Shown in pieces: positions 4,058 through 63,393 of a DNA stretch of 64,000 nucleotides. The stretch lies in NCBI GenBank assembly GCA_002269645.1, contig NIVC01000672.1, positions 62,001-126,000 on the forward strand. Direction: 5' to 3'. Under the pieces are notes generated by a model, which did no database searches, was not told where the DNA came from, and saw only the letters and a list, made by a program, of their open reading frames with translations. The position numbers and the translations under genes are program-made. Positions within the stretch are counted from its first letter, which is position 1, and every line of letters begins with the position of its first letter. The DNA is from Macrostomum lignano. Lineage: Eukaryota.

Positions 4058-5298
4058 CTATTGACTGCGCTGAGCCTGCTGCACCTGCTGCTGGAGTTGC
4101 TGCACCTGCTGCTGGAGCTGCTGCACCTGCTGCAGGAGCTGCTCGACGCTCCTCGTCCGCTCGTCCAGTCCGCTCAGCAGAGTCCGCAGCTGCGAGACGC
4201 CTCCGAACCTGTCAGCCATCTGCTCGAGCTCCATAGTGCTGTGAGCCCAGTTCGCCACGTTGACCTGCAGCTTCTTGAACTGCTCGAAGACGCTGCCGAC
4301 TCGCCTCTTCACGTCGGCCACCTCGAGACCGTCGGCGGTTGTGACGGCGGGAGCTGCGGAACCTACATAAGACTGCGGCACGGCGGCTGCTGAAAATAGG
4401 AAAAAAAAATAAACCACAGAACAGCATCTTCTGCGTGATTTTATTACTGATTTTGACACCAGTTCTTACAGGGACTCTGCTGAGCTATTGCTGCCTGCTT
4501 GAGTTTTGAGTCCATGAGCTCAAGGTGAGAGTCCACGCTCTCCCTGTAGTGCCTCTCCAGATCGGACCTGCGCACCATCGCCCTGCAGCCCAGGTGAGAG
4601 TACTTGCACTCTACCGGTCTCTCGGGACACTCCGACAGGTGAGCAACATATCCCCGCCTGTCCATCGGTGTGCTCCGCTCCGAGCAGTGAGGACAGCGAG
4701 CTGAGAATCTCGGACAGCACACATCGGACTGCAGATTCCTGTGACTGGTCTCCATCTCGCTGTGTGTGACCAGCTGAGAGCACAGGTCGCAGGTCTCCTT
4801 CCTGTGGCGACACTCGCTGCTGGTGTGTCGCTGCATGTCCTTCTTCAGGATGAGCTCTTTGCACTGCTCACAGCGGAGTGAGTGCCAGTCGCAGCTCTGT
4901 TGCACATGCTGGTCTATGCGAGCCCATTCCAGTTGGACAGAGCAGCCGGCGTCGCAGTTCGGACAGCGGACTCGCAGCTTGGCGACCTCGCGTCTAGTCG
5001 CCATGTCGGGAAAGCAGGTAGCATGGCTCACCTCGGTCTCGACATCGCCGCCGCTGCCACCGCCGCCAACGTCCTCCTCCGAGTGGTGGTCTCTGAGTGT
5101 GCAGGCCTCGGTGTGTCCGGGACAGGGCCGCTTCTCCACCTCGTGCAGCAGGCCGGTGACGCAGGCCTGGCACAGGCGGCACCCGTGCGGAGTCTGTCGG
5201 GCGTTGAAGAGCGGCTTGGAGCAGCTGCTGCACTGCAGGTGAGCCGGCAGAGCGGAGACCGGCCTCGCAACCGACACACTCGAAGGCAGCTCCGACAT
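4058..5298 (-). CDS. TRAF-like copy 1: RING + zinc fingers + coiled coil, no MATH (exons 5298-4470, 4389-4058; 386 aa)
   Basis: ATG 5298; phase-1 donor CCC T|GTAAGA; acceptor ttttcag|CA; in-frame join to the coiled-coil exon ending LQQQVQQAQRSQ*. TRAF-type fingers such as CEQCKELILKKDMQRHTSSEC and CKYSHLGC...ERH...HLELM. Confidence 0.88.
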
Positions 5299-12113: not shown

Positions 12114-13353
12114 TCAAGCTCTCTGTTGCAGCTGCTGCACCTGCTGCTGGAGCTGCTGCACCTGCTGCTGCAGCTGCTCGACGCTCCTTGTCCGCTCGTC
12201 CAGTCCGCTCAGCAGAGTCCGCAGCTGCGAGACGCCTCCGAACCTGTCAGCCAGCTGCTCGAGCTCCATGGTGCTGTGAGCCCAGTTCGCCACGTTGACC
12301 TGCAGCTTCTTGAACTGCTCGAAGACGCTGCCGACTCGCCGCTTCACATCGGCCACCTCGCGACCGTCGGCGGTAGTGGCGGTGGGAGCTGCGGCACCGA
12401 CAGAGGACTGCGGGACCGCAGCTGCTGGAAATGAACAATTAAACATTATTGCAATAGCGACCAACAAAACATTCGCATCCAACCACCTTAATGTATTAGC
12501 GCACATTGATCTTTGCTATTATTCAACAGAAAAGCTTACCAGAATTCGATGGAACAACAGCTGCCTGCTTGAGCTTCGAGTCCATGAGCTCAAGGTGAGA
12601 GTCCATGCTGTCCCTGTAGTGCCTCTCCAGATCGGACCTGCTTACCATCTCCCCGCAGCCCAGGTGAGAGTACTTGCATTCTACCGTTCTCTCGGGACAC
12701 TCCGACAGGTGAGCAACATATCCCCGCCTGTCCATCGGTGTGCTCCGCTCCGAGCAGTGAGGACAGCGAGCTGAGAATCTCGGACAGCACACATCGGACT
12801 GCAGATTCCTGTGACTGGTCTCCATCTCGCTGTGTGTGACCAGCTGAGAGCACAGGTCGCAGGTCTCCTTCCTGTGGCGACACTCGCTGCTGGTGTGTCG
12901 CTGCATGTCCTTCTTCAGGATGAGCTCTTTGCACTGCTCACAGCGGAGTGAGTGCCAGTCGCAGCTCTGTTGCACATGCTGGTCCATGCGAGCCCATTCG
13001 AGTTGGACAGAGCAGCCGGCGTCGCAGTTCGGACAGCGGACTCGCAGCTTGGCGACCTCGCGTCTCGTCGCTATGTCGGGATAGCAGGTAGCTCGGCTCA
13101 CCTCGGTCTCGACCCCGCCGCCAACGTCCTCCTCCGAGTGGCGGTCTCTGAGTGTGCAGGCCTCGGTGTGTCCGGGACAGGGCCGCTTCTCCACCTCGTG
13201 CAGCAAGCCGGTGACGCAGGCGTGGCACAGGCGGCACCCGTGCAGAGTCTGTTGGGCGTTGAAGAGCGGCTTGGAGCAGCTGCTGCACTGCAGGTGAGCC
13301 GGCAGATCGGAGACCGGTCGGGCTCCCGACACTCGCTCTGGAAGTTCTGACAT
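12114..13353 (-). CDS. TRAF-like copy 2: RING + ZF + coiled coil, no MATH (exons 13353-12540, 12424-12114; 374 aa)
   Basis: ATG 13353; donor TCT G|GTAAGC; acceptor catttccag|CA; ends LQQRA*; AATAAA on the minus strand at 11835-11840. Confidence 0.88.
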
Positions 13354-15656
13354 GACGCATGTGTCCTGCTGAAAAGTGAGAAGTCTTTTATTAAAAACTT
13401 TAGGCGTTTTTGTGAAAGGGTGTGGCTCTGTTTTTGTCATCAAACGCTGCAATGTTCCTTTTTAGCTGCGTGCTGAGTCCATAAAACACGGAAGCTTGCT
13501 CATGACTCATTTTGGCACAAAAATTTTTAGAGATTCGTTTAGGTAAAATTGGCCTGTTACTAGTGTCATGCCATTGTCCATAAGGCACAGCCTGGTGTAA
13601 TGACAAACTCAACTGGCCATTATTTCAGCTTTAGCAGGCGTTTGAACCATAAACGATTAGTTAAATATGCATTTGTTAACTGACATATGAGAATAATCGC
13701 AAACAGTCTACATGGAATTCTGGAATACACTGAAAAAACGGTTCGTTCAGTCGTCGACAAGAAGATATTCCAATTAATAAGCGGGGCTGTTTGACGAGAT
13801 GCACCAGCCATAGTTGCTTGACAAGACAAATAGCTTTTACTCGTACTACCCACTTTCCTGATTTCTTGCAAGACGCAAACGAAATCGGCACTCATCACAG
13901 TGTTGTCTATGGTCAAACTAAGACACACATCTCAGTCATCTATGGGTAAAATAACTCTCAAAACAGCCAATTAAAGCGTGATAAAAAGTGTGAAATAATG
14001 ACCGCTTCCGGCACGCTGAAATAATGGCCGTCAGACTACGCTATGCTGAAATAATGGCCTCTATGTGCCATAGACTTTGTTTGGCCATTATTTCAGTCCC
14101 TTACCTACTACGCAATCTACCATTATGTCCAATATTCATAAAACTTTTACCGTTTTCACCAGACTTCATCGAACAAAAAAACTTAATTACTTTTTAAGGC
14201 GTTAAAAACATTTGTCACACAATCGTTTTTGTTCTCAATACGAAATGTTGACGCGTCTTGTGGGAATTATTTCTATAATCTTAATCTAACAGTTTCGAAG
14301 TTGCAAAATCAGGGGTAGCTACAACTAATTAAAACTTTGAGATGAAGGCTTATGCTGGAAGATTTGCTCACCTGTCGGATTTGAGAAGCAACTGATAGGC
14401 CTAAAAGAGAGCCGGAAGGGTCAAATTAAAGGCTGTTGTGACCTCTGCTGTTCTGGCAATTGACAACGACTATTATAAATTGCCTAATAAAAATTCTAAA
14501 TTCTTTAACAAAGTCGTTTTTGTTCTAGTTAACCTAGTTAAATCCAAGACACGAAAGTCCGCAGTTGCGCGGCATAAAAGATAAAAAAGTATATAAAATA
14601 AAGACATTGAGTAATAAGACTATTGGCCGCAAAAACAATGAAAAAGCCAACCAAGCTCATTTAAGCAAAGAAATCAAGTTTCACTGTTTCACTGAAGAAA
14701 ACTTCCAAACTGCAGTGTATTTCTTTACTCAAAATGAAGCAAGTACGTCGTACATGAGACTCGCGAGCAATTGATAGATAAAATTTATAGCCTAATTCTA
14801 GTCAGTTACCTGATTAAGATTATTGTGACTTTAATAAGAAACTGGTTTGTTTCTAAACTACGATTGATTATAATCGTAGTTTTAAATGCTCAAATTTAAA
14901 AAAGCCTATCTTCTGCCAACTCAAACAGCCGCAGGATTCTTTTAAACAGCAAGCGAGCTTTTCAATGTCAAACGTAAGTTCTACGCTTTCCACAACTGGC
15001 TTAAATAGTCGTAATGGGTGAGAGAGAATAATCACGTGCTGTGCTATGTGCTTCTGTTTATAGATAACGCGCAGATATGTGAATTGTCTAAAAATAGAAA
15101 CAGATGTCATTCTGGGCTAAAAATATCCATGAGCATTAGATAGCTCATTCTGTAGCTGGGGCTCACTCTGTATCTTGGACTCATTCTGTAGCTGTCGCCC
15201 CCCCCCTCTGTAGCTGGCGCTGGCCCCTCTGTGCTGTGTACTCGGCTCTATGTGAGGGTCTGCAGCATCTCAACAATAACTAGCTGTATACCAATAAATT
15301 TCAGACTGTATCTGACCTACTTAAAGCAGATATAAACGTGTACAAGTTTTTCTTTCTAGTCAAAAGTGAAGAAAGCGAAAGAAATGTACATTTCTGTCAC
15401 TGTAGCTAATAGTGTACTCACAGCACTGCCGTACATTTAATTTTAGACGTTCAAATTAAAGAGAACTTCATCCAAAATGAAAATTTTCCGCAGCGATTCC
15501 ACGGCAGTTCCGTGGAAAGAAATTTCTGTCGGCTACAGACAGGTGAGTAAAATCACAAACGCTCGACGAGCAAAGGCAGTTCCAAACGGCAGAAGCACAT
15601 ATGAAAAAGAGGATACTACGTGGGTACTGCGATCATTACTAAAGCAGTTGAGCACC

Positions 15657-18600
15657 ATGTCAGGACTTCCTCAGCGAGTGTCGGCAGCCCGACCGGTCTC
15701 CGATCTGCCGGCTCACCTGCAGTGCAGCAGCTGCTCCAAGCCGCTCTTCAACGCCCGACAGACTCCGCACGGGTGCCGCCTGTGCCACGCCTGCGTCACC
15801 GGCCTGCTGCACGAGGTGGAGAAGCGGCCCTGTCCCGGACACACCGAGGCCTGCACACTCAGAGACCACCACTCGGAGGAGGACGTCGGCGAAGTCGAGG
15901 TCGAGGTGAGCCAGGCTACCTGCTTTCCCGACATGGCGACGAGACGCGAGGTCGCCAAGCTGCGAGTCCGCTGTCCGAACTGCGACGCCGGCTGCTCTGT
16001 CCAACTCGAATGGGCTCGCATGGACCAGCATGTGCAACAGAGCTGCGACTGGCACTCACTCCGCTGTGAGCAGTGCAAAGAGCTCATTCTGAAGAAGGAC
16101 ATGCAGCGACACACCAGCAGCGAGTGTCGCCACAGGAAGGAGACCTGCGACCTGTGCTCTCAGCTAGTCACACACAGCGAGATGGAGACCAGTCACAGGA
16201 ATCTGCAGTCCGATGTGTGCTGTCCGAGATTCTCAGCTCGCTGTCCTCACTGCTCGGAGCGGAGCACACCGATGGACAGGCGGGGATATGTTGCTCACCT
16301 GTCGGAGTGTCCCGAGAGACCGGTAGAGTGCAAGTACTCTCACCTGGGCTGCAGGGCGATGGTGCGCAGGTCCGATCTGGAGAGGCACTACAGGGAAAGC
16401 ATGGACTCTCACCTTGAGCTCATGGACTCGAAACTGAAGCAGACAGCGATATCTCATTCGAATTCCGGTATGTCAGTATTGTGTCGGGTTAATGGATTTT
16501 TTTGTTGAGACAAATTTTATGCACTGCTACTCCAAAAATTTTATTTTTTGGTCAGCTGTTTTCAGTGGCCGATGGCAGTTTATGGACGCTCCTGTGGGCG
16601 ACCGAAGCCGACACGACGCACAGCTGGCCTCCGTGCCGCGAGACCCCGGCCAAGATCCGGTAGAATCGCCTGTGAGCTCTGAATCGTTCCTTCACAGGCC
16701 GCATGCGTTGGGTGGAGCTCTGCAGTTGCAGAATGTGAGCTGCTTTGCGATTTTTTAACTCATTTGCATCTTTATTCATTTAGACGAAAGTCCTGTCACT
16801 GAGCCCATTCCACATTTTTAGCCAATTTGCAACTCCATTGCTGCCGACTCGCCTGTCCGAATGCTGGGCAGGCCGAAACAGCTGCTGTCCGAGCTGGTGT
16901 TCAGTCGGGGCCATGCTGGCCGAGTCACGTCTGCCTGCTCTCTAGACGGGCGGCAGATTTTTGTTTCGGGAGGCGCGGACGGAATCGCGGTGCTGTGGCA
17001 CCTCGGCTCAATGCGTCTCCAGAGTCGAGTCCGGGCCCCTGCGAGTTGGGGTTCAATCACCTGTCTGGTGTCTCCGGCATCTGACATTCTGTTGGCCGGC
17101 TGGGAGAATCTGAATGGACTCGTGCGACTCCGGTGCCCGGAGGGGTATCTGTGCGACACTGATGCTGAGCTGGAGCACCTCTTGAGCACTGGACAGGCGG
17201 AGCTGCTTCAAGGCAACTCACCTGTGGCGGCCATGTGCACAGTTCCCGAATCTGCTGAGGTCATTGTCGCCCTCACCAACAGAAGCCTCGCACTGGTGCC
17301 AGCCGAAGGAGGTCTTCAGCCGCTGGTTGGGCTCACCGGTTTCGACCCTCTGGCTGGCCCGCCGGTGTTTTTGCGGATTCTGGAGCCCGGGTGGCTGCTG
17401 GCATGCCAGCTCAGTAGCCCTGTGCTCCGCTCCGCTCAGCTGCACACGGCTCAGGATGGCAGGATGGCTGTCAGCGGCTGGCGAACCTTCCAGTGCTTCG
17501 ACGAGATGGCGGCGGATGCTTCTCCAGTGATTCGGGCGTGCGCTGCAGGCTGCGGTCCCGGAGTTGCCATTGTGGCGTTTCGGTGCCAAAGTCGCAATCG
17601 GATCGCCATCGTTAAACTCGGCTCCGATGCGAAAATTCATCCCGTCTTGACGGGTTTTATGGTGAATGTGTTTCTTTTTAATATTTGATGTCTGAATTTC
17701 TAACCTTATAATATTGCTTCAAGTTGCTGCATGCTGAAGTTCAATTCTGAAACTGAGGATGTTTTCCATTTTTCACCAAATTCACCCAGAACTTCCTCAA
17801 GATTTCACCCCGATCTCACCCCGATCTCACCCCGATCTCACCCCGATCTCACCCCGATCTCACACCGATCTCACCCTGATCTCACCCCGATCTCACCCCG
17901 ATCTCACCCCGATCTCACCCCGATCTCACCCCGATCTCACCCCGATCTCACCCCGATCTCATCCCGATTTCATCACGATCTCACCCCGATTTCATCCCGA
18001 TCTCACACTGATCTCACCTCGATCTCACCCCGATCTCACCCCGGTTTCACCCTGATCTCACACCGAACTCACCCCGATCTCACCCCGATCTCATCCCGAT
18101 CTCACCCCGATCTCACCCCGATCTCACCCCGATCTCACCCCGATCTCACCCCGATCTCACCCCGATCTCACCCCGATTTCATCCCGATCTCACACTGATC
18201 TCACCTCGATCTCACCCCGATCTCACCCCGGTTTCACCCTGATCTCACACCGAACTCACCCCGATCTCACCCCGATCTCATCCCGATCTCACCCCGATCT
18301 CACCCCGATCTCACCCCGATCTCACCCCGATCTCATCACGATCTCACCCCGATCTCACCCCGATTTCATCCCGATCTCACACCGATCTCACCTCGATCTC
18401 ACCCCGATCTCACCCCGGTTTCACCCTGATCTCACACCGAACTCACCCCGATCTCCCTGCGATTTGTCTCCCTTTCCGCAGTGCCACACCCGGCCGATAC
18501 GAGCCATCAGCCTGCTGACGAGCGACCTCACGGGCGCCCTGCCGCTCCTGGCCACGGCCTCTGCTCAAGGGAAAGTCAGCGTTTGGCGCATGCAGAGCGG

Positions 18601-18857
18601 GGTCAATCAGCTGGCTGAGGTCAGGCATCATGCAGTCATTTTTCGTTTCGCTTCTAATCAAACTTCTCGCCAATTTCTAACCCGCCCCTGCCACTCAGGT
18701 TTCTCACTTCGAGCACGGCCACGAGGTTACCACCCTGGGGCTGCACCTCACAGCCACCGACCGGCCTCTGCTGCTTGTCGGGGATGCTGGCGGGAACACC
18801 TTCTCTCTGGAGCTTCCTTGGCTTGATGCGAACGCATTTCATCAGACTGCATTTTGA
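15657..18857 (+). CDS. TRAF-like copy 3: RING + ZF + linker + WD40-like propeller (exons 15657-16467, 16556-16734, 16822-17661, 18482-18619, 18699-18857; 708 aa)
   Basis: All four introns are GT-AG with phases 1,0,0,0 and the joined frame is open. WD-like repeats SRGHAGRVTSAC...VSGGADGIAVLW and CHTRPIRAI...LATASAQGKVSVW. Confidence 0.85.
17796..18452. repeat. 11-bp minisatellite (ctcaccccgat)n in intron 3, with a 187-bp higher-order period
   Basis: Variant ggtttcaccctg recurs at 18043, 18230 and 18417. Confidence 0.95.
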
Positions 18858-19331
18858 TGCTTTATGGAAATTTATTTTAAAGGATTTTCCGTTTTTTCGA
18901 TTTTACGAGACTGGTCCTTGTGGGGTGATGCGGCTTTTTACCCATCACCTTTTTAGGCTTGGCCTTGGCCTCGTGCATATAACCTGACTACCGAATGATC
19001 TATTAGTATATGTATATGGTTTACTCATGTGCTCTGTACAAACCGCTCCGCTCTTGCCGGCGAAATGACGCTCCGGCAAAATAAACAGCTTCCAATAACG
19101 AATTTTTCTAGTTTTGTTTCGTAATGCTGGATAAAATATTGTCGTACGCTCGTATATCGAATTTCTGTTTTGGGAAAGCGCCCTTCTGGAACTCGCATGC
19201 ATATCAGGGGCCTGTTGTGAAGGGGCGCTGAAATTACTGTGAGGGGGCGTCATTATTTTTGTCACAATCCCTTAGGCCCCCTGTCAATGCTAGGTGTATC
19301 AATACCTAAACCTGCCGATAGGCGAATCCGC

Positions 19332-19950
19332 CTTCCCTCTGCCTTCACTCTGCCTTCACTCTGCCTTCCCTCTGCCTTCCCTCTGCCTCCCTCTGCTTTC
19401 ACTCTGCCTTCCCTCTGACTTCCCTCTGCCTTCCCTCTGACTTCCCTCTGCCTTCCCTCTGCCTTCCTTCTGCCTTCCCTCTGCTTTCACTCTGCCTTCC
19501 CTCTGCCTCCCTCTGCTTTCACTCTGCTTTCACTCTGCCTTCCCTCTGCCTTCCCTCTGCCTTCCCTCTGACTTCCCTCTGCCTTCCCTCATCCCTCTGA
19601 CTTCCCTCTGCCTTCCCTCTGCCTTCCCTCTGACTTCCCTCTGCCTTCCCTCATCCCTCTGACTTCCCTCTGCCTTCCCTCTGACTTCCCTGTGCCTTCC
19701 CTCTGCCTTCCCTCTGCCTTCCCTCTGCTTTCACTCTGCCTTCCCTCTGCCTCCCTCTGCTTTCACTCTGCTTTCACTCTGCCTTCCCTCTGCCTTCTCT
19801 CTGCCTTCCCTCTGCCTTCTCTCTGCCTTCCCTCTGCCTTCACTCTGCCTTCCCTCTGCTTTCACCCTGCCTTCACTCTGCCTTCCATCTGCCTTCACTC
19901 TGCCTTCACTCTTCCTTCCCTCTGCCTTCTCTCTGCCTTCCCTCTGCCTC
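19332..19950. repeat. 11-bp minisatellite (cttccctctgc)n
   Basis: Direct reading; shorter paralogous array at 41395-41690. Confidence 0.95.
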
Positions 19951-20417
19951 TTACAATTCAGGGGCTTTGGGACTCCCATTGGGACTCCAAAGATAAACTG
20001 GGACACCACTTTGTCTGCATAGAGATTTACAACAGGCTCTCTAAATCGAAAGTACATGAATGAATGCGCGGCCGAATCCTTGGTCCTTGGAGCGGGAGTC
20101 GCTCGGCCACCCAGCCCTGAATTCTGAAAGCTGGAAGCAAGTCGCTCAGAAGAGGAAAAGTAACGAGAACTGAAGTATGCAGTGAGAAGACCTTGAGAAA
20201 AGGCAGAAAATAAGAAAACCAAAACCGAGCTTCTCAAATCTAATTAGCACTGAAGATTTTATTTGTTCAAAAAGCCGCTTGAAAAAAGCACTATTTCGGC
20301 AATCGGCAATCCAAGGTTCGATTAAAACAGCTTTTAAACTGCTCTTATTAACTTCGTCAGGAGCGTAGGACGGCCCGATAACGCATCTTGGGCAGGATGC
20401 GACGCTTCCTTCTCACC

Positions 20418-25856: not shown

Positions 25857-27145
25857 TCAGGCTCGATGTCGCTGCAGCTCCTGCACCTGCTGCTGGAGCT
25901 GCAGCACCTGTTGCTGCAGCTGCTCGACGCTCCTCGTCCGCTCGTCCAGTCCGCTCAGCAGAGTCCGCAGCTGCTCGACGCTCCTCGTCCGCTCGTCCAG
26001 TCCGCTCAGCAGAGTCCGCAGCTGCGAGACGCCTCCGAACCTGTCAGCCAGCTGCTCGAGCTCCATGGTGCTGTGAGCCCAGTTCGCCACGTTGACCTGC
26101 AGCTTCTTGAACTGCTCGAAGACGCTGCCGACTCGCCGCTTCACGTCGACCACATCGCGTCCATCGGTGGCTGTGGTGGCAGGAACTCCGGTACCGACAG
26201 AAGAATGCGGGACCGCGGATGCTAAAAGTTTAAAAAAATTAATTTAATATCCGAGAATACGTTCGTAGCCGCTTTTACTGCATAACCACTTTACTGGTTT
26301 AGAAAGCAAATCTTACCAGGACTCTGCTGAGCTATCGCTGTCTGCTTCAGTTTCGAGTCCATGAGCTCAAGGTGAGAGTCCATGCTTTCCTTGTAGTGCC
26401 TCTCCACATCGGACCTGCGCACCATCGCCCTGCAGCCCAGGTGAGAATACTTGCACTCTACCGGTCTCTCGGGACACTCCGACAGGTGAGCAACATATCC
26501 CCGCCTGTCCATCGGTGTGCTCCGCTCCGAGCAGTGAGGACAACGAGCTGAGAATCTCGGACAGCACACATCGGACTGCAGATTCCTGTGACTGGTCTCC
26601 ATCTCGCTGTGTGTGACCAGCTGAGAGCACAGGTCGCAGGTCTCCTTCCTGTGGCGACACTCGCTGCTGGTGTGTCGCTGCATGTCCTTCTTCAGGATGA
26701 GCTCTTTGCACTGCTCACAGCGGAGTGAGTGCCAGTCGCAGCTCTGTTGCACATGCTGGTCCATGCGAGCCCATTCGAGTTGGACAGAGCAGCCGGCGTC
26801 GCAGTTCGGACAGCGGACTCGCAGCTTGGCGACCTCGCGTCTCGTCGCCATGTCGGGAAAGCAGGTAGCATGGCTCACCTCGGTCTTGACCTCGCCGCCG
26901 CTGCCACCGCCGCCAACGTCCTCCTCCGAGTGGTGGTCTCTGAGTGTGCAGGCCTCGGTGTGTCCGGGACAGGGCCGCTTCTCCACCTCGTGCAGCAGGC
27001 CGGTGACGCAGGCCTGGCACAGGCGGCACCCGTGCGGAGTCTGTCGGGCGTTGAAGAGCGGCTTGGAGCAGCTGCTGCACTGCAGGTGGGCCGGCAGATC
27101 GGAGACTGGCCGGGCTCCCGACACACTCGAAGGCAGCTCGGACAT
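25857..27145 (-). CDS. TRAF-like copy 4: RING + ZF + coiled coil (exons 27145-26317, 26221-25857; 397 aa)
   Basis: Donor CCT G|GTAAGA; acceptor cttttag|CA; the coiled coil carries a 51-bp internal duplication (LRTLLSGLDERTRSVEQ twice); ends LQRHRA*. Confidence 0.88.
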
Positions 27146-29837: not shown

Positions 29838-32800
29838 ATGTCCGAGCTGCCTTCGAGTGTGTCGGCAGCCCGGCCAGTCTCCACTGTGCCGGCTCACCTG
29901 CAGTGCAGCAGCTGCTCCAAGCCGCTCTTCAACGCCCGACAGACTCCGCACGGGTGCCGCCTGTGCCAGGCCTGCGTCACCGGCCTGCTGCACGAGGTGG
30001 AGAAGCGGCCCTGTCCCGGACACACCGAGGCCTGTACACTCAGAGACCACCACTCGGAGGAGGACGCTAGCGGCCAGGTCGAGGTCGAGGTGAGCCAGGC
30101 TACCTGCTTTACCGACATGGCGACGAGACGCGAGGTCGCCAAGCTGCGAGTCCGCTGTCCGAACTGCGACGCCGGCTGCTCTGTCCAACTCGAATGGGCT
30201 CGCATGGACCAGCATGTGCAACAGAGCTGCGACTGGCACTCACTCCGCTGTGAGCAGTGCAAAGAGCTCATCCTGAAGAAGGACATGCAGCGACACACCA
30301 GCAGCGAGTGTCGCCACAGGAAGGAGACCTGCGACCTGTGCTCTCAGCTAGTCACACACAGCGAGATGGAGACCAGTCACAGGAATCTGCAGTCCGATGT
30401 GTGCTGTCCGAGATTCTCAGCTCGCTGTCCTCACTGCTCGGAGCGGAGCACACCGATGGACAGGCGGGGATATGTTGCTCACCTGTCGGAGTGTCCCGAG
30501 AGACCGGTAGAGTGCAAGTACTCTCACCTGGGCTGCAGGGCGATGGTGCGCAGGTCCGATCTGGAGAGGCACTACAGGGAAAGCATGGACTCTCACCTTG
30601 AGCTCATGGACTCGAAACTGAAGCAGACAGCGATATCTCATTCGAATTCCGGTATGTCAGTATTGTGTCGGGTTAATGGATTTTTTTGTTGAGACAAATT
30701 TTATGCACTGCTACTCCAAAAATTTTATTTTTTGGTCAGCTGTTTTCAGTGGCCGACGGCAGTTTATGGACGCTCCTGTGGGCGACCGAAGCCGACACGA
30801 CGCACAGCTGGCCTCCGTGCCGCGAGACCCCGGCCAAGATCCGGTAGAATCGCCTGTGAGCTCTGAATCGTTCCTTCACAGGCCGCATGCGTTGGGTGGA
30901 GCTCTGCAGTTGCAGAATGTGAGCTGCTTTGCGATTTTTTAACTCATTTGCATCTTTATTCATTTAGACGAAAGTCCTGTCACTGAGCCCATTCCACATT
31001 TTTAGCCAATTTGCAACTCCATCGCTGCCGACTCGCCTGTCCGAATGCTGGGCAGGCCGAAACAGCTGCTGTCCGAGCTGGTGTTCAGTCGGGGCCATGC
31101 TGGCCGAGTCACGTCTGCCTGCTCTCTAGACGGGCGGCAGATTTTTGTTTCGGGAGGCGCGGACGGAATCGCGGTGCTATGGCAGATCGACTCAATGCGT
31201 CTCCAGAATCGTGTCCGGGCCCCTGCGAGTTGGGGTTCAATCACCTGCCTGGTGTCTCCGGCATCTGACATTCTGTTGGCCGGCTGGGAGAATCTGAATG
31301 GACTCGTGCGACTCCGGTGCCCGGAGGGGTACCTGTGCGACACTGATGCTGAGCTGGAGCACCTCTTGAGCGCTGGACAGGCGGACCTGCTTCAAGGCAA
31401 CTCACCTGTGGCGGCCATGTGCACAGTTCCCGAATCTGCTGAGGTCATTGTCGCCCTCACCAACAGAAGCCTCGCACTGGTGCCAGCCGAAGGAGGTCTT
31501 CAGCCGCTGGTTGGGCTCACCGGTTTCGACCCTCTGGCTGGCCCGCCGATGTTTTTGCGGATTCTCGAGCCCGGGTGGCTGCTGGCCCGCCAGCTCAGTA
31601 GCCCTGTGCTCCGCTCCGCTCAGCTGCACACGGCTCAGGACGGCAGGATGGCTGTCAGCGGCTGGCGAACCTTCCAGTGCTTCGACGGGACGGCGACCGA
31701 TGATCCTCCAGTGATTCAGGCGTGCGCTGCAGGCTGCGGTCCCGGGGTTGCCATTGTGGCGTTTCGGTGCCAAAGTCGCAATCGGATCGCCATCGTTAAA
31801 CTCGGCCCCGATGCCAAAATTCATCCCGTCTTGACGGATTTTATGGTGAATCGTGTCTGTTTAATATCTGATGTCTGAATTTCTAACCTAAAATTATTGT
31901 TTCAAGTTGCTGCAGGCTAAAGTTCAATTCTGAAACTGGGGATGTCTTCCATTTCTCCCCAAATTCACCCAGAATTTCCTCAAGATTTCACCCCGATCTC
32001 ACCCCGATCTCATCACGATCTTACCCTGATCTCACTCCGATCTCACACCGATCTCACCCCGATCTCAACACGATCTCAACCCGATCTCAGCCCGATCTCA
32101 CTAATATCTCATCCCGATCTCACTACGATCTCACTACGATCTCACCCGATCTCACCCCGATCTCAACACGATCTCACCCCGATCTCAGCCTGATCTCACT
32201 AAGATCTCATCCCGATCTCACTACGATCTCACTACGATCCCACTACGATCTCACCCGATCTCACTCCGATCTCACCCGATATCACCCGATCTCACCCCGA
32301 TCTCAACCCGATCTCACCCCGATCTCACACCGATCTCACACCGATCTCACACCGATCTCACACCGATCCCACACCGATCTCACCCCGATCTCACCTAGAT
32401 CTCACTCCGATCTCATTCCGGTTTCAACCCGATCTCACCCAGATTTTTCGATCAAAACACCTGGAAGCATTTGTTTCCCTTTCCGCAGTGCCACACCCGG
32501 CCGATTCGAGTCATCAGCCTGCTGACGAGCGACCTCACGGGCGCCCTGCCGCTCCTGGCCACGGCCTCTGCTCAAGGGAAAGTCAGCATTTGGCGCATGC
32601 AGAGCGGGACAAATCGGCTGGCTGAGGTCAGGCATCGTGCAGTGATTTTTCATTTCGCTTCTAATCAAACTTCTCGCCAATTTCTAACCCGCCCCTGCCA
32701 CTCAGGTTTCTCACTTCGAGCACGGCCACGAGGTTACCACCCTGGGGCTGCACCTCACAGCCACCGACCGGCCTCTGCTGCTTGTCGGGGATGCTGGCGG

Positions 32801-32864
32801 GAACACCTTCTCTCTGGAGCTTCCTTGGCTTGATGCGAACGCATTTCATCAGACTGCATTTTGA
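29838..32864 (+). CDS. TRAF-like copy 5: RING + ZF + WD40-like (exons 29838-30651, 30740-30918, 31006-31845, 32489-32626, 32706-32864; 709 aa)
   Basis: Same splice sites as copy 3 (exons 2-3 offset by 14184 bp); open joined frame. Confidence 0.85.
31985..32440. repeat. (ctcaccccgat)n-type intronic minisatellite, more degenerate copy
   Basis: Lies in intron 3 of copy 5. Confidence 0.9.
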
Positions 32865-43486: not shown

Positions 43487-43496
43487 CTGTGAAATT

Positions 43497-46594: not shown

Positions 46595-47815
46595 TCAGGC
46601 TCGATGTCGCTGCAGCTGCTGCACCTGCTGCTGGAGCTCCTGCACCTGCTGCTGCAGCTGCTCGACGCTCCTCGTCCGCTCGTCCAGTCCGCTCAGCAGA
46701 GTCCGCAGCTGCGAGACGCCTCCGAACCTGTCAGCCAGCTGCTCGAGCTCCATGGTGCTGTGAGCCCAGTTCGCCACGTTGACCTGCAGCTTCTTGAACT
46801 GCTCGAAGACGCTGCCGACTCGCCGCTTCACGTCGACCACATCGCGTCCATCGGTGGCTGTGGCGGCAAGAGCTCCGGCACCGACAGAAGACTGCGGGAC
46901 CGCAGATACTAAAAGTATAAATTTTTTTTTAATATCCGAAAATACGCTCGTAGCAGCTTTTTCTGGTTAACCAATTTACTGATTTGGAAAGCAAATCTCA
47001 CCAGGACTCTGCTGAGCTATCGCTGCCTGCTTCAGTTTCGAGTCCATGAGCTCAAGGTGAGAGTCCATGCTTTCTCTGTAGTGCCTCTCCAGATCGGACC
47101 TGCGCACCATCGCCCTGCAGCCCAGGTGAGAGTACTTGCACTCTACCGGTCTCTCGGGACACTCCGACAGGTGAGCAACATATCCCCGCCTGTCCATCGG
47201 CGTGCTCCGCTCCGAGCAGTGAGGACAGCGAGCTGAGAATCTCGGACAGCACACATCGGACTGCAGATTCCTGTGACTGGTCTCCATTTCGCTGTGTGTG
47301 ACCAGCTGAGAGCACAGGTCGCAGGTCTCCTTCCTGTGGCGACACTCGCTGCTGGTGTGTCGCTGCATGTCCTTCTTCAGGATGAGCTCTTTGCACTGCT
47401 CACAGCGGAGTGAGTGCCAGTCGCAGCTCTGTTGCACATGCTGGTCCATGCGAGCCCATTCGAGTTGGACAGAGCAGCCGGCGTCGCAGTTCGGACAGCG
47501 GACTCGCAGCTTGGCGACCTCGCGTCTCGTCGCCATGTCGGGAAAGCAGGTAGCCTGGCTCACCTCGACCTCGACCTGGCCGCTAGCGTCCTCCTCCGAG
47601 TGGTGGTCTCTGAGTGTACAGGCCTCGGTGTGTCCGGGACAGGGCCGCTTCTCCACCTCGTGCAGCAGGCCGGTGACGCAGGCCTGGCACAGGCGGCACC
47701 CGTGCGGAGTCTGTCGGGCGTTGAAGAGCGGCTTGGAGCAGCTGCTGCACTGCAGGTGAGCCGGCAGATCGGAGACCGGCCGGGCAGCCACGACACTCGA
47801 AGGCAGCTCGGACAT
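46595..47815 (-). CDS. TRAF-like copy 6: RING + ZF + coiled coil (exons 47815-47002, 46908-46595; 375 aa)
   Basis: Donor CCT G|GTGAGA; acceptor cttttag|TA; TGA TGA followed immediately by AATAAA (46587-46592). Confidence 0.9.
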
Positions 47816-50934: not shown

Positions 50935-53402
50935 ATGTCCGAGCTGCCTTCGAGTGTGACGGCCGCACGGCCGGTCTCCGATCTGCCGGCCCACCTGCAG
51001 TGCAGCAGCTGCTCCAAGCCGCTCTTCAACGCCCGACAGACTCCGCACGGGTGCCGCCTGTGCCACGCCTGCGTCACCGGCCTGCTGCACGAGGTGGAGA
51101 AGCGGCCCTGTCCCGGAAACACCGAGGCCTGCACACTCAGAGACCACCACTCGGAGGAGGACGCTGGCGGCGAGGTCGAGGTCGAGGTGAGCCAGGCTAC
51201 CTGCTTTCCCGACATGGCGACGAGACGCGAGGTCGCCAAGCTGCGAGTCCGCTGTCCGAACTGCGACGCCGGCTGCTCTGTCCAACTCGAATGGGCTCGC
51301 ATGGACCAGCATGTGCAACAGAGCTGCGACTGGCACTCACTCCGCTGTGAGCAGTGCAAAGAGCTCATCCTGAAGAAGGACATGCAGCGACACACCAGCA
51401 GCGAGTGTCGCCACAGGAAGGAGACCTGCGACCTGTGCTCTCAGCTGGTCACACACAGCGAGATGGAGACCAGTCACAGGAATCTGCAGTCCGATGTGTG
51501 CTGTCCGAGATTCTCAGCTCGCTGTCCTCACTGCTCGGAGCGGAGCACACCGATGGACAGGCGGGGATATGTTGCTCACCTGTCGGAGTGTCCCGAGAGA
51601 CCTCGTGGCGCTTCGATCGCACCTCAGCGCCAAATTGCCTCTTCTCAACGGCTGCAGCGAGCTATTGGTAAGTGAAACATTTTTAAATACAAATTTATGT
51701 CATGTGTGTTTCTGGCTTCAATTTTCTGAAAAGTAGCAAACTATTCAACTTCACGGATTCTCAGGCAACTCTGGGAGCCGACCAGCGCGTGACTCCGCCA
51801 CGGACAGCAGCAGAATTTTGTTTGACGAAAGGCTGACTGATTCGCCGCAGGAGCCTGTCCAGGATCCAGCAGCGCCTTCAGCGAATTTTATTGCAACCGG
51901 CGGGTCGATTGCGACGCAACATTTTCCTCTTCCTTTTGGTGGAGCCGAACAAGTGCATGTTGTAAGACTTGCAAGTACACTGTGTTCGTAGCTTAGCCAG
52001 TACATTGTGTTAGCTTAGCAAGTACACTGTGTTAGCTTAGCAAGTGTAGTTTGTTAGCTTAGCAAGTGCAGTGTGTTAGCTTTTTCGCCTTCAACTTGCA
52101 GCCCGTTCGCGACCCCGAGTCGTCTGACCGCCCAGTGCAGTTGCTGCATCCTTCAAACTTGCCACCCGCTGAGCTGGGCTTCAGCCGAGGTCACAGCAGT
52201 CGAGTCGCCGCAGTCTGCCGTCTTGGAAACATTTCTTTTGTTGCCACTGGCGGCGCGGACGGGTCCGTGCTGCTGTGGCACCTGGACTCCATGTGTCTGC
52301 AGCATCGAATGCTGGCGCCATCAGCTTGGGGAGCCGTGACCCATCTGAACTCGCCGACGGGTAGCCTTCTGTTGCTCAGCTGGCAGCAGCGGACAGGCCT
52401 GGTCAGAATCCGCTGTGGGCAGCTCCTACTTCAAGGCATTGAGTCGCTTCTGCGTGACATGTTGAATGCCGGAGTCGCAGAGCTGCTGGACAGCCACTCG
52501 CCCGTGACAGCCCTCTGCCCCATCCCTGAGAATCACGCGGCAGTCGTAGGCTTTGAAGATTCCACTTTGGCTTTGGTGGCAGCGCAGGGCAGTTTCGTCG
52601 CCCTTCGGCACCAAAGTGCCGGCGACCTGGATGCGACGGCTGGGCCGCCGGTGCTTCTGCGGATCGTGGAGCCGGGCTACATGCTCTGCTTGCAGCTCGG
52701 CAACCCCAGGCTTTACTTGGCGACGCTGCGCACCGCGTTGCCGGGTCCTGCCATTGTTGGAGGCTGGCGAGCTTCAGACCGACTCGACTTGCTGGACGAA
52801 GCTGCGGCCTTGCTGCAGGCATTCGCTGCCGGCGACTTGCCCGGAGAAGCCTGTCTGATATTCCCTTGTGGGATACCCGGGCGGATCTCGGTGCTCAGAG
52901 TGGACTCCAACATGCAGCTCTGCCCAGTGGTCAGCAGATTTCTGGTAAGCTTTTTGAACAGCTGCAGAGAATTTCAACGTCTTGAAAATCTGACCTCAGA
53001 AGAAATATTTGATCGCACTGTGCTCACCGCCCGTTGCAGTGCCACGCGCAGCCAATCACCGCCCTCTGCCGGCTGACGGACGATCTGAGCGGCGCCCTGC
53101 CGTTCCTCGCCACGGCCTCGGCCGGCGGGGAAGTCAGCGTCTGGCGCATGCAGGCCGGAGCTGCACTGAACCAGCTCGCTGAGGTGCGGCTTAAAATCTC
53201 CCTCATGAGCTTCTATCGCATTGTGTTTTTTATTATCAGAATATTTCGAACCCTGCAATTTTTGCAGGTGTCGCACTTCAAGCACAGCTGCGAAGTTACT
53301 ACGATGAAGCTGCTGTCATTCGATGCTCAGCTGCATCTGCTTGTCGGAGATGCTCGGGGCAACGTTTTCTGCCTGAAGTTGCCAGTTGGTTCAAGCTTGT
53401 AA
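50935..53402 (+). CDS. TRAF-like copy 7: RING + ZF (last finger lost) + divergent WD40-like propeller (exons 50935-51667, 51765-51961, 52102-52944, 53040-53183, 53268-53402; 683 aa)
   Basis: ATT G|GTAAGT, tctcag|GC, GTT|GTAAGA, ttgcag|CCC, CTG|GTAAGC, tgcag|TGC, GAG|GTGCGG, ttgcag|GTG; phases 1,0,0,0; open joined frame. Confidence 0.83.
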
Positions 53403-58168: not shown

Positions 58169-58999
58169 CTGTACTCCGCTGAGCTATCACGGCCTGTCAG
58201 AGCCTCGAGTCCATGAGCGCAAGGTGAGAGTCCACGCTGTCGATGTGGTGCCTCTCCAGATCGGACCTGCGCACCATCGCCCTGCAGCCCAGGTGAGAGT
58301 ACTTGCACTCTACCGGTCTCTCGGGACACTCCGACAGGTGAGCAACGTAAGCACGTCAATCCAGTTTTTTTCTACTGTTGCAGTGAGGACAGCGAGCAGA
58401 GTATCTCGGACAGCACACATCGGACTGCAGATTCCTGTGACTGGTCTCCATCTCGCTGTGTGTGACCAGCTGAGAGCACAGGTCGCAGGTCTCCTTCCTG
58501 TGGCGACACTCGCTGCTGGTGTGTCGCTGCATGTCCTTCTTCAGAATGAGCTCTTTGCACTGCTCACAGCGGAGTGAGTGCCAGTCGCAGCTCTGTTGCA
58601 CATGCTGGTCCATGCGAGCCCATTCGAGTTGGACAGAGCAGCCGGCGTCGCAGTTCGGACAGCGGACTCGCAGCTTGGCGACCTCGCGTCTCGTCGCCAT
58701 GTCGGGAAAGCAGGTAGCCTGGCTCACCTCGATCTCGACCTCGCCGCCGCCAACGTCCTCCTCCGAGTGGTGGTCTCTGAGTGTGCAGGCCTCGGTGTGT
58801 CCGGGACAGGGCCGCTTCTCCACCTCGTGCAGCAGGCCGGTGACGCAGGCCTGGCACAGGCGGCACCCATGCGGAGTCTGTCGGGCGTTGAAGAGTTGAA
58901 GGCGTTGAACTGGGCGTTGGAGCAGCAGCTGCACTGCAGGTGAGCCGGCAGATCGGAGACCGGCCGGGCTTCCGACACACTCGAAGGCAGCTCGGACAT
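58169..58999 (-). pseudogene. TRAF-like copy 8 exon 1 (pseudogene)
   Basis: Frameshifting micro-duplication in the RING (ttcaacgcc repeats, about 58890-58920); in-frame TGA at 58356-58358 and at about 58198-58200; phase-1 donor ACA G|GTAAAT retained. Confidence 0.88.
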
Positions 59000-62140: not shown

Positions 62141-63393
62141 ATGTCCCAGTTGGAACTTCCCCAAAGAGTGTCGGTCGCCAGGCCAGTCTCCAATCTGCCG
62201 GCTCACCTGCAGTGCAGCAGCTGCTCCAAGCCGCTCTTCAACGCCCGACAGACTCCGCACGGGTGCCGCCTGTGCCAGGCCTGCGTCACCGGCCTGCTGC
62301 ACGAGGTGGAGAAGCGGCCCTGTCCCGGACACACCGAGGCCTGCACACTCAGAGACCACCACTCGGAGGAGGACGTTGGCGGCGGCGAGGTCGAGATCGA
62401 GGTGAGCCAGGCTACCTGCTTTCCCGACATGGCGACGAGACGCGAGGTCGCCAAGCTGCGAGTCCGCTGTCCGAACTGCGACGCCGGCTGCTCTGTCCAA
62501 CTCGAATGGGCTCGCATGGACCAGCATGTGCAACATAGCTGCGACTGGCACTCACTCCGCTGTGAGCAGTGCAAAGAGCTCATTCTGAAGAAGGACATGC
62601 AGCGACACACCAGCAGCGAGTGTCGCCACAGGAAGGAGACCTGCGACCTGTGCTCTCAGCTGGTCACACACAGCGAGATGGAGACCAGTCACAGGAATCT
62701 GCAGTCCGATGTGTGCTGTCCGAGATTCTCAGCTCGCTGTCCTCACTGCTCGGAGCGGAGCACACCGATGGACAGGCGGGGATATGTTGCTCACCTGTCG
62801 GAGTGCCCCGAGAGACCGGTAGAGTGCAAGTACTCTCACCTGGGCTGCAGGGCGATGGTGCGCAGGTCCGATCTGGAGAGGCACTGCAAGGACAGCGTGG
62901 ACTCTCACCTTGAGCTCATGGACTCGTTTATGCAGTTCATTGTCTTTCGTATCTTCATACTTCGGTCTCATGGTGAGTTTTCTGTTGGGAGTAATAAAGT
63001 GTCTGCTTTAGGAATTTATTAGTCTATTTCGACTCTTCATAGTACTACAGTGTGTACCCAATCGCTGCGCTGCTACATTGATTCTAGAACCATCAGCTGA
63101 TGAGAGTCCGCAGCGGTCCCATCGCTATTTAGTCACATCGGCTCAGGATTCCATCACCAGTGCCGCAGTGTCTGTTGATCAGCTGCTTTATTCGGTGGGT
63201 TGCAGTTTTGCATGCAGTTTTTATGTTGAATATCCTATATACTAAAAATGGTCTGTCTTTGATTTCTAAAAAACGGCCCACGCTGTCTTTTCAGCTGTCC
63301 GAGCTGCAAACAGCCGACTCTCCTGTGCGACTCTACTCCACACCGGTGCTACCCATGTGCGAGCTCCAGCTTCATCCTTTGCAGTTTTCTTAG
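62141..63393 (+). CDS. TRAF-like copy 9, WD40-class but truncated (exons 62141-62972, 63088-63194, 63295-63393)
   Basis: Phase-1 donor CAT G|GTGAGT; phase 1-0 linker exon (ttctag|AA...TCG|GTGGGT); exon 3 LSELQTADSPVRLYSTP..CEL matches AADSPVRMLGRP..SEL of the other WD exons, then stops at TAG. Confidence 0.6.

What the first reader, a model, noticed from the sequence alone, without database searches (positions are those of the whole stretch)
15657..18857. TRAF7-like RING-ZF-WD40 architecture, apparently built by exon shuffling at a phase-1 intron
Seen: three complete 5-exon genes (copies 3, 5, 7) join the TRAF exon to about 380 aa of degenerate WD40-like sequence; copy 9 retains the start of a third divergent version. 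The same phase-1 donor leads to a coiled-coil exon in the minus-strand genes. Known: TRAF7 is the canonical WD40-bearing TRAF, but it has few zinc fingers and a coiled coil. Here the N-terminus has about five TRAF2/3/6-style fingers and the linker is Pro/Ser/Asp-rich. Inference: independent replacement of MATH by a fast-evolving propeller.
Basis: partly seen in the sequence, partly recalled or inferred. Interest (0 to 1): 0.72.

Follow-up and report, generated by a model that had tools for sequence, protein, structure and literature searches.

The report
Flatworm TRAF gene with WD40-like tail
In a cluster of immune-type TRAF genes of the flatworm Macrostomum lignano, three intact genes join the usual RING/zinc-finger head to a species-restricted, barely recognisable WD40-like tail, an apparently independent re-invention of the TRAF7 layout whose head exon is kept almost identical to that of its neighbours by gene conversion.

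Summary
Window 15657-18857 (+) is an intact five-exon, all GT-AG gene (708 aa) on Macrostomum lignano scaffold NIVC01000672.1. It encodes a variant RING plus five TRAF zinc fingers (exon 1), a Pro/Ser/Asp-rich linker (exon 2) and about 378 aa of beta-rich sequence (exons 3-5).

Two paralogues, copies 5 and 7, share the same exon and phase layout. Only about three of seven putative blades are recognisably WD40. AlphaFold2 confidence was low, so a closed propeller is likely but not shown.

It is not a TRAF7 orthologue. An exhaustive profile search found full-length relatives only in M. lignano.

Exon 1 is 97-99% identical across both gene types. Between copies 3 and 7, synonymous divergence jumps from 0.09 in exon 1 to 1.09 in the WD body. 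This indicates an old fusion whose head was later homogenised by gene conversion.

The neighbouring TRAF genes stop after a coiled coil and lack MATH, so "replacement of MATH" is unsupported.

Splicing of exon 1 to exon 2 is inferred from frame conservation. No transcript evidence was obtainable.

Verdict: a new variant of a known kind, of moderate interest.

The parts
15657..16467 (+). Copy 3 exon 1: variant RING (aa 23-62) plus five TRAF-type zinc fingers. It ends in phase 1 at CCG|GTATGT.
16556..16734 (+). Copy 3 exon 2: 60-aa Pro/Ser/Asp-rich linker, entered in phase 1 and left in phase 0.
   Evidence: Only the phase-1 frame is open and conserved against copy 7 (z 4.6, 0 of 300 shuffles).
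16822..17661 (+). Copy 3 exon 3: 280 aa holding putative blades 1-5 of the WD40-like domain. Blade 1 is canonical.
17801..18455 (.). Minisatellite of 11-bp units (GATCTCACCCC, about 60 copies) filling intron 3 of copy 3. The same array lies in copy 5 intron 3 (31984-32444).
18482..18619 (+). Copy 3 exon 4: putative blade 6 (HTRPIRAISLL...ATASAQGKVSVWRMQ).
   Evidence: The junction is identical in UniRef A0A1I8G7W2 for copy 5.
18699..18857 (+). Copy 3 exon 5: putative blade 7 and the stop codon.
   Evidence: AlphaFold2 pLDDT is 65-75 here.
29838..32864 (+). Copy 5: recent duplicate of copy 3 (709 aa). Exons 29838-30651, 30740-30918, 31006-31845, 32489-32626, 32706-32864.
   Evidence: About 95% nucleotide identity to copy 3, introns included. 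dS 0.045.
50935..53402 (+). Copy 7: old paralogue (683 aa). Exons 50935-51667, 51765-51961, 52102-52944, 53040-53183, 53268-53402. Its exon 1 departs from the shared sequence after 51602, lacks finger 5, and keeps phase 1.
12540..13353 (-). Copy 2 exon 1: head-to-head partner of copy 3. It is a TRAF/coiled-coil gene using the same phase-1 donor.
12114..12427 (-). Copy 2 coiled-coil exon, ending ...QQLQQRA followed by a stop codon.
   Evidence: Matches P0005.
4470..5298 (-). Copy 1 exon 1 (TRAF/coiled-coil gene). Its junction to the coiled-coil exon reproduces UniRef A0A1I8G627 (P0003).
26317..27145 (-). Copy 4 exon 1 (TRAF/coiled-coil gene), head-to-head with copy 5. The inverted repeat extends about 250 bp upstream of the ATG.
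47002..47815 (-). Copy 6 exon 1 (TRAF/coiled-coil gene), head-to-head with copy 7. It is 99.3% identical to copy 5 exon 1.
58170..58999 (-). Copy 8 exon 1: a pseudogene with a frameshift and stop codons.
62141..62930 (+). Copy 9 exon 1: intact. No significant WD body follows before the window ends.

Best explanation
Copy 3, with copies 5 and 7, is a functional protein-coding gene restricted to the Macrostomum lineage. It sits in a tandem, head-to-head TRAF gene cluster.

**Product.**
- A TRAF2/3/5/6-type N-terminal module: a RING with ligands 3 and 4 swapped to His-x-Cys, plus five TRAF zinc fingers.
- A short disordered linker.
- A C-terminal domain of about 370 aa that is most likely a degenerate seven-bladed WD40-type propeller.

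**Likely mode of action (inferred).** It most likely acts as a RING E3 ligase or adaptor. The conserved head would supply E2 binding and dimerisation. The propeller, rather than a coiled coil or MATH domain, would supply partner recognition. That is the same functional logic as TRAF7, arrived at independently.

**History (inferred).** The TRAF exon became joined to the WD exons across a phase-1 intron before copies 3 and 7 split. Since then most of exon 1 has been repeatedly overwritten by gene conversion among all cluster members, of both gene types. The WD body meanwhile diverged under moderate purifying selection.

**Shown:** the ORFs, exon phases, domain matches, divergence numbers and restriction to M. 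lignano. **Inferred:** the exon 1 to exon 2 cis-splice, the closed propeller and the biochemical role.
For: - **Intact genes.** Three five-exon GT-AG models are intact. Every exon-length difference among them is a multiple of 3: 811/814/733, 179/179/197, 840/840/843, 138/138/144, 159/159/135. The chance of that is about 0.004.
- **Coding constraint on the body.** Copies 3 and 7 give dN 0.48, dS 1.09, omega 0.44, with p = 6e-11.
- **Exon 2 needs an upstream phase-1 exon.** It is open and conserved only in the frame set by a phase-1 upstream exon, and in copy 7 it has no in-frame ATG.
- **Donor conservation.** The same phase-1 CCG|GTATG donor is present in a relative whose exon 1 is 63% identical (L001).
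- **Independent support for two junctions.** UniRef A0A1I8G7W2 is an exact substring of the copy 5 model across the exon 3/4 and 4/5 junctions.
- **Head.** It matches TRAF6/TRAF5 RING-zinc-finger structures at E 1e-10.
- **Tail.**
  - Blade 1 matches G-beta, RACK1 and designed WD40 proteins.
  - The last blades match Pfam propeller families below threshold.
  - A generic blade HMM gives seven peaks spaced roughly 40-65 residues apart.
  - The AlphaFold2 models are largely beta (about 27 strands in copy 3, about 20 plus two helices in copy 7), with pLDDT 55-80 in the last two to three blades.
  - All top-50 Foldseek PDB hits for both models are beta-propellers.
- **Not TRAF7, and lineage-restricted.**
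- **Gene conversion.** Exon 1 is 97-99% identical irrespective of gene type, and homology stops at the exon borders. Synonymous divergence is 0.09 in exon 1 against 1.09 in the body.
Against: - No transcript or annotated protein spans the exon 1/2 or exon 2/3 junction. The database holds only N-terminally truncated WD fragments from gene prediction.
- No TRAF-WD product from the NCBI annotation of this assembly appeared among the database hits. The three loci whose called genes I could list (L002, L003, L004) cover only window 1-15298 and flanking cluster segments, so the annotation over copies 3, 5 and 7 was never seen.
- The M. lignano spliced leader ends in ATG, and the exon 3 acceptor is in phase 0. 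A trans-spliced, stand-alone WD protein is therefore frame-compatible.
- AlphaFold2 confidence is low (pLDDT 42-44) and Foldseek TM-scores are only 0.16-0.34.
- The middle 190 aa have no detectable family similarity. Four of the seven putative blades score within shuffle noise.
- omega of 0.44-0.57 is high for a structured domain.
Confidence: 0.6

Rival explanations
1. The WD exons form a separate gene. Exon 3 would be SL trans-spliced, with the leader's terminal ATG as the start codon, or in copies 3 and 5 translation would start at the Met inside exon 2. The adjacent TRAF exon would not be part of the same mRNA.
For: - The M. lignano SL ends in ATG and about 30% of its genes are trans-spliced (PMC8629364).
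- The exon 3 acceptor is in phase 0 in all three copies.
- Database models contain only the WD part.
- No TRAF-WD fusion protein exists in about 15 billion proteins.
Against: - Exon 2 is conserved as protein only in the phase-1 frame. In copy 7 it lacks any ATG, so it needs an upstream phase-1 exon, and the TRAF exon lies 88-97 nt upstream.
- A cis donor upstream normally out-competes SL addition (rule quoted in PMC8629364).
- Copy 7's private exon-1 tail still ends in phase 1.
- All indels across the five exons preserve the reading frame.
Confidence: 0.15
2. One reading: the TRAF exon was recently and repeatedly shuffled onto pre-existing WD bodies. Exon-1 identity would then reflect recent insertion rather than conversion of an old fusion.
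For: - Homology between gene types stops sharply at the exon-1 borders.
- A phase-1 donor is shared by both gene types.
- dS in exon 1 is only 0.06-0.09.
Against: - In copy 7, the last 65 nt of exon 1 plus exon 2 are diverged like the rest of that gene, yet still encode an in-phase bridge. A head exon was therefore already attached when copies 3 and 7 split.
- Exon-1 identities do not follow gene type or duplication history: copy 5 (+) against copy 6 (-) is 99.3%. That is typical of concerted evolution.
Confidence: 0.1
3. The WD-type genes are decaying relics or mispredicted sequence and make no functional protein.
For: - There is no expression evidence.
- Most blades are degenerate.
- Copies 8 and 9 in the same cluster are broken or truncated.
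- For copies 3 and 5, omega is 0.57 and not significantly below 1 (p = 0.12).
Against: - Three ORFs of 683-709 aa stay intact across five exons despite dS of about 1.1.
- omega is 0.44 with p = 6e-11.
- All splice sites are canonical and all indels are in frame.
Confidence: 0.08
4. It is the true TRAF7 orthologue of M. lignano, tandemly duplicated.
For: The gross layout is the same: RING, TRAF finger(s), WD40 repeats, no MATH.
Against: - No full-length WD relative exists outside M. lignano among 1.84 billion representatives. All 149 other listed hits match only blades 1-2, and the 10 scanned are generic WD40 arrays.
- There are five fingers rather than one or two, and no coiled coil.
- Exon 1 is 97-99% identical to the neighbouring TRAF/coiled-coil genes.
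Confidence: 0.03

Closest known systems
TRAF7 (RING, TRAF zinc finger, coiled coil, seven WD40 repeats)
   Same: - An N-terminal RING and TRAF-type zinc finger(s) are followed by a WD40-type C-terminal domain in place of the MATH/TRAF-C domain.
- The presumed logic is the same: an E3/adaptor head with a propeller as the recognition module.
   Different: - Five zinc fingers, against one or two in TRAF7 (my own knowledge of TRAF7).
- No coiled coil; a Pro/Ser/Asp-rich linker stands in its place.
- The WD domain is degenerate, with about three recognisable blades, and has no detectable relatives outside M. lignano.
- The head exon derives from the local TRAF/coiled-coil family.
- The resemblance is therefore convergent, not orthology.
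TRAF6 / TRAF2,3,5 N-terminal region (RING plus four or five zinc fingers)
   Same: - Best solved-structure matches are TRAF6 5vo0, 8hz2, 3hcs and TRAF5 7l3l, at E 1e-10 to 4e-8.
- The finger spacing is the same, and Pfam zf-TRAF scores above its threshold.
   Different: - No TRAF-N coiled coil and no MATH/TRAF-C domain.
- RING ligand positions 3 and 4 read His-Gly-Cys instead of Cys-x-His, and the last pair reads Cys-x2-His.
Neighbouring M. lignano TRAF/coiled-coil genes (PAA78655.1 = BOX15_Mlig029665g1; A0A1I8G627)
   Same: - Exon 1 is 97-99% identical.
- The same phase-1 donor is used.
- They lie in the same cluster, paired head-to-head with the WD-type genes.
   Different: Their second exon is a roughly 100-aa coiled coil followed by a stop codon (378 aa in total). 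The WD-type genes have four further exons instead.
Lineage-specific TRAF expansions in flatworms (planarian MATH/TRAF expansion; PMC6109357, PMC7586133)
   Same: TRAF-family genes are greatly amplified in free-living flatworms, and here there is a tandem cluster. Counting window and locus hits together, I make it at least 14 exon-1 copies on this scaffold.
   Different: The planarian expansion was catalogued by MATH domains. The genes here have no MATH domain at all, and a WD-bearing form is not mentioned in those papers.

Membership tests
TRAF family, canonical (TRAF1-6) | C-terminal TRAF domain: TRAF-N coiled coil plus TRAF-C/MATH | tested here: not met
   No MATH hit at E <= 1 in copy 3 or at E <= 0.1 in copy 7. 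The linker is Pro-rich, not a coiled coil.
TRAF family, canonical (TRAF1-6) | N-terminal RING followed by TRAF-type zinc fingers | tested here: met
   - Pfam zf-TRAF scores 39.4 bits against a cut-off of 27.
- TRAF6/TRAF5 RING-zinc-finger structures match at E 1e-10.
- All eight RING ligand positions are occupied, with His/Cys swapped at positions 3 and 4, and five fingers follow.
TRAF7 | Orthology of the WD40 domain to metazoan TRAF7 | tested here: not met
   - In the exhaustive profile search, only M. lignano P0002 matches the WD body at full-domain strength (the sole hit at E <= 1e-30).
- The other 149 listed hits cover only profile positions of about 1-120. The 10 I scanned are generic WD40 proteins with no zf-TRAF among the families shown (best 25 per protein).
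- A direct reciprocal test against a TRAF7 sequence was not possible.
TRAF7 | Coiled coil between the zinc finger and the WD40 repeats | tested here: not met
   Exon 2 is a 60-66 aa linker with 6-7 Pro and 7-8 Ser. AlphaFold2 predicts no helix at the start of the domain. No dedicated coiled-coil predictor was run.
TRAF7 | Seven WD40 repeats forming a propeller | tested here: inconclusive
   See the WD40 rows below.
WD40-repeat beta-propeller | Several tandem WD40 units detectable by sequence | tested here: inconclusive
   - Pfam WD40 scores 25.6-26.5 bits, below the cut-off of 27, for one unit.
- The blade HMM finds blades 1 and 6 above all shuffles. Copy 7 blade 3 reaches the shuffle maximum. 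The rest are within noise, although the seven peaks are spaced 40-65 aa apart.
- The middle 190 aa have no Pfam hit.
WD40-repeat beta-propeller | Closed propeller fold | tested here: inconclusive
   - The two AlphaFold2 models have pLDDT 44 and 42. They are largely beta (about 27 and about 20 strands), each with two short helices.
- The C-terminal 100 aa reach pLDDT 55-80.
- All top-50 Foldseek hits are propellers, but TM-scores are only 0.16-0.34.

The most novel reading that the evidence does not exclude
The cluster may be a modular 'one head, several tails' system. Gene conversion would keep the RING/zinc-finger exon, and in copies 4-7 its roughly 215-250 bp promoter-proximal flank, nearly identical in head-to-head TRAF/coiled-coil and TRAF/WD gene pairs. 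Their products would then be co-expressed from shared intergenic regions and could hetero-oligomerise through identical heads. They would carry different, quickly diverging recognition tails. That would amount to a combinatorial innate-signalling or ubiquitin-ligase repertoire, with a TRAF7-like member invented independently in a flatworm.
Probability: 0.15. Interest if true: 0.6.

Novelty: new variant of a known kind. Interest (0 to 1): 0.4.

Why it matters
**Domain evolution.** If the fusion is expressed, this is a second, independent origin of the RING, TRAF-finger, WD40 layout otherwise known only from TRAF7. That would bear on whether TRAF7 is a "true" TRAF or a convergent domain combination.

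**Genome dynamics.** One exon is homogenised by conversion across two gene types (dS about 0.09), while the rest of the gene has diverged to saturation (dS about 1.1). This is a clean example for studying exon-limited concerted evolution and exon-phase-compatible domain swapping.

**Annotation.** These genes appear in public protein sets only as truncated fragments. Neighbouring annotated models in the cluster are chimeric or span several copies.

**Limits.** There is no expression evidence and no confident fold, and the family is known from one species. The general importance is therefore moderate.

Tried and rejected
- **Look-up of a window transposase ORF**, tried as a route to the local annotation. 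It was not on record.
- **Other parts of the M. lignano cluster (L003, L004).** They hold only TRAF/coiled-coil genes and no WD body.
- **Structure prediction.** Two AlphaFold2 runs with the only available three-sequence alignments gave pLDDT 44 and 42. I did not pad the alignment with generic WD40 proteins, because that would bias the model towards a propeller.
- **Self and profile comparisons.**
  - hhalign of the alignment against itself found only a weak blade 1 to blade 6 relation.
  - A profile comparison with a canonical WD40 protein aligned blade 1 only (probability 75%).
- **Pfam on the middle 190 aa.** Nothing at E <= 10.
- **Literature.** No paper on Macrostomum TRAF genes or on the gene identifiers Mlig029665, Mlig005209 or Mlig006760.
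- **Rfam.** No match in the window.
- **Rejected readings.**
  - TRAF7 orthology.
  - A MATH domain hidden in the downstream 250-aa ORFs, which have no Pfam or PDB match. The coiled-coil exon also ends in a conserved stop codon.
Full report
**Origin of the window.** The sequence is eukaryotic and intron-bearing. The only close protein matches are from the free-living flatworm Macrostomum lignano. A locus fetched through one of those proteins, NIVC01000672.1 of assembly GCA_002269645.1, is 100% identical to window 1-15298 in reverse. The window therefore corresponds to roughly positions 62001-126000 of that scaffold.

**The observation.**
- Copy 3 exons are 15657-16467, 16556-16734, 16822-17661, 18482-18619 and 18699-18857. 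All have GT-AG borders and together give one 708-aa ORF. Exon 1 ends in phase 1.
- tblastn finds nine copies of the TRAF exon. Five are on the minus strand (starts 5298, 13353, 27145, 47815, 58999). Four are on the plus strand (15657, 29838, 50935, 62141). They form four head-to-head pairs 2.3-3.1 kb apart, plus one unpaired minus-strand copy.
- Copies 5 and 7 yield intact five-exon models of 709 and 683 aa with the same phases.
- The minus-strand genes use the same phase-1 donor to reach a coiled-coil exon of about 100 aa that ends in a stop codon. This reproduces the database proteins P0003, P0004 and P0005.
- Copy 8 is a frameshifted pseudogene.
- Copy 9 has an intact exon 1 but only an insignificant remnant of a WD start (E = 9).

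**The N-terminal module.**
- Exon 1 has a RING-like motif, C-x2-C-x11-H-x-C-x2-C-x2-C-x12-C-x2-H. The third and fourth ligands are swapped relative to C3HC4.
- Five CCHC/CCHH fingers follow.
- It matches TRAF6 and TRAF5 RING-zinc-finger crystal structures at E 1e-10 to 4e-8, and Pfam zf-TRAF above threshold.
- The His-Gly-Cys variant is present in the eight copies with an intact exon-1 frame (copy 8 is frameshifted). It is also present in a 63%-identical exon from another sequencing run (P0006/L001), which has the same phase-1 CCG|GTATG donor.

**The C-terminal region.**
- *Sequence evidence.*
  - One unit (C-terminal positions 23-67) is a canonical WD40 blade. It matches G-beta, RACK1 and designed propellers and scores 25.6-26.5 bits against Pfam WD40, just under the cut-off of 27.
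  - The last 100 aa or so give sub-threshold matches to several Pfam propeller families.
  - They also show a weak internal repeat relation to blade 1.
  - The middle 190 aa match nothing in Pfam even at E = 10.
  - An HMM built from 447 blades of unrelated WD40 proteins, slid along copies 3 and 7, gives seven peaks near positions 25, 74, 122, 187/203, 239, 286 and 326.
  - Only blades 1 and 6 exceed every shuffle, and copy 7 blade 3 reaches the shuffle maximum.
- *Structure prediction.*
  - Two AlphaFold2 runs on the only alignment available (three paralogues) gave low confidence, pLDDT 44 and 42.
  - The models are largely beta (about 27 and about 20 strands), with two short helices at equivalent places.
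  - pLDDT is 55-80 in the last two to three blades.
  - Every one of the top 50 Foldseek PDB hits for both models is a beta-propeller, but TM-scores are only 0.16-0.34.
- *Conclusion.* A degenerate seven-bladed WD40-type propeller is the most likely fold. It is not demonstrated.

**Relatives.**
- A word-indexed search of 5.8 billion clusters found only two M. lignano fragments.
- An exhaustive HMMER profile search of 1.84 billion representatives found one full-length relative, again M. lignano. There were 1893 further hits. The other 149 listed all align only to profile positions of about 1-120, repeatedly.
- The 10 that I scanned are generic WD40 proteins, some with KAP-NTPase or SMEK domains. 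None shows a TRAF finger among the families listed (the best 25 per protein).
- The WD body is therefore lineage-restricted and is not a recognisable TRAF7 orthologue.

**Is it a real, joined gene?**
- *Coding constraint.* Between copies 3 and 7 the WD exons have dN 0.48, dS 1.09 and omega 0.44. The non-synonymous deficit has p = 6e-11.
- *Frame preservation.* All five exons differ in length only by multiples of three, which has a chance of about 0.004.
- *Exon 2.* Of the nine frame combinations for copy 3 against copy 7, only the frame imposed by a phase-1 upstream exon is open in both and similar at protein level (score 48, z 4.6, 0 of 300 shuffles). Copy 7 exon 2 has no in-frame ATG. The TRAF exon, with its phase-1 donor, lies 88-97 nt upstream.
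- *Copy 7's tail.* The last 65 nt of copy 7 exon 1 are private and diverged. They lack finger 5, yet still end in phase 1.
- *Independent prediction.* UniRef A0A1I8G7W2 is an exact substring of my copy 5 model across the exon 3/4 and 4/5 junctions.
- *Against.*
  - No database protein or contig spans the exon 1/2 junction.
  - No TRAF-WD product from the NCBI annotation appeared among the database hits. The loci whose called genes I could list do not cover copies 3, 5 or 7.
  - The M. lignano spliced leader ends in ATG (PMC8629364) and the exon 3 acceptor is in phase 0. A stand-alone, trans-spliced WD protein is therefore a legitimate rival.

**History.**
- Exon 1 is 97-99% identical at nucleotide level among all intact copies, whatever the gene type. 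Copy 5 (+) against copy 6 (-) is 99.3%.
- Homology between gene types stops at the exon borders. In copies 4-7 it stops about 215-250 bp upstream of the ATG.
- Between copies 3 and 7, dS is 0.093 in exon 1 and 1.09 in the body (p = 1e-25).
- The identity ends abruptly at 16321/51602, inside the exon.
- This pattern fits gene conversion homogenising the head of an old fusion better than recent repeated shuffling. The original junction at a phase-1 intron is still, in the broad sense, an exon-shuffling event.
- The neighbouring TRAF genes have no MATH domain, so 'replacement of MATH' is not shown here.

**Likely function (inferred).** The product would be a RING E3 ligase or adaptor. The conserved head would bind the E2 and dimerise, as in TRAF6. 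A propeller would serve as the partner-binding platform, which is TRAF7-like logic reached independently. TRAF families are known to be expanded in free-living flatworms (PMC6109357, PMC7586133). Neither those two papers nor the papers listed by my five literature searches describe a WD-bearing form.

**Verdict.** The gene is best filed as a new variant of a known kind, of moderate interest. The main uncertainties are expression and splicing of exon 1 to exon 2, and the fold of the middle of the C-terminal domain.

Noticed in passing
window 7218-7976 (-) and 1439-2206 (-); also L003 24966-25676: Paralogous single-exon ORFs of about 250 aa, 43% identical to each other, lie 2-4 kb downstream of TRAF/coiled-coil genes on the same strand. 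They have no Pfam or PDB sequence match, are not called as genes in the listing for L002 (which covers window 1-15298), and their function is unknown.
   Followed up: partly
window 15657-16467 aa 23-62, all eight copies with an intact exon-1 frame (copy 8 is frameshifted), and L001: The RING has its third and fourth zinc ligands swapped (QTPHGCRLC instead of the TRAF6-type QTPCGHRFC), and its last pair reads C-x2-H. The variant is conserved in a 63%-identical relative, so it is probably functional.
   Followed up: partly
window 9991-11724, 17801-18455, 19330-19949, 22149-22467, 24284-25231, 31984-32444, 43497-44148, 55811-56434, 59615-60156: The cluster is packed with minisatellites of 11- to 40-bp units, up to 1.7 kb long, mostly in introns or between genes. 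The same 11-bp array fills intron 3 of copies 3 and 5, whereas copy 7 intron 3 is only 95 nt.
   Followed up: no
window 32952-40639 (+): Fragments of a Ty3/gypsy-type LTR retroelement: gag/SCAN-like, protease, integrase, RT and RNase H, in a scrambled order. A PIF/Harbinger-type transposase (HTH plus DDE_Tnp_4, 35637-36851) is nested inside. Together they separate the copy 5 unit from the copy 6 unit.
   Followed up: partly
window 18938-24552 versus 40976-45974: A segmental duplication at 82-98% identity includes a GC-rich stretch (about 60%) at 19663-21770 / 41397-43498. The ORFs there are low-complexity and have no Pfam match, so the content is unidentified.
   Followed up: no
window 4058-13353 (-) and L002 / L003 / L004: Public gene models in this cluster look unreliable. 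One 380-aa product is mapped across 9.3 kb, from copy 2 exon 1 to copy 1's coiled-coil exon. P0007 (BOX15_Mlig006760g2) is a chimera of exon 1 with the antisense of a coiled-coil exon. The likely cause is multi-mapping of near-identical exon 1 copies.
   Followed up: partly
window 26328-27394 / 29623-30640 / 47013-48067 / 50719-51602: In copies 4-7 the inverted repeat shared by head-to-head partners extends about 215-250 bp upstream of the ATG. The 5' UTR and promoter-proximal region may therefore be co-homogenised with exon 1. In the copy 2/3 pair only the exon is shared.
   Followed up: no
window 58170-58999 (-) and 62141-64000 (+): The last head-to-head pair is decaying. Copy 8 exon 1 is frameshifted with stop codons. 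Copy 9 has an intact exon 1 but no recognisable downstream body within the window.
   Followed up: partly
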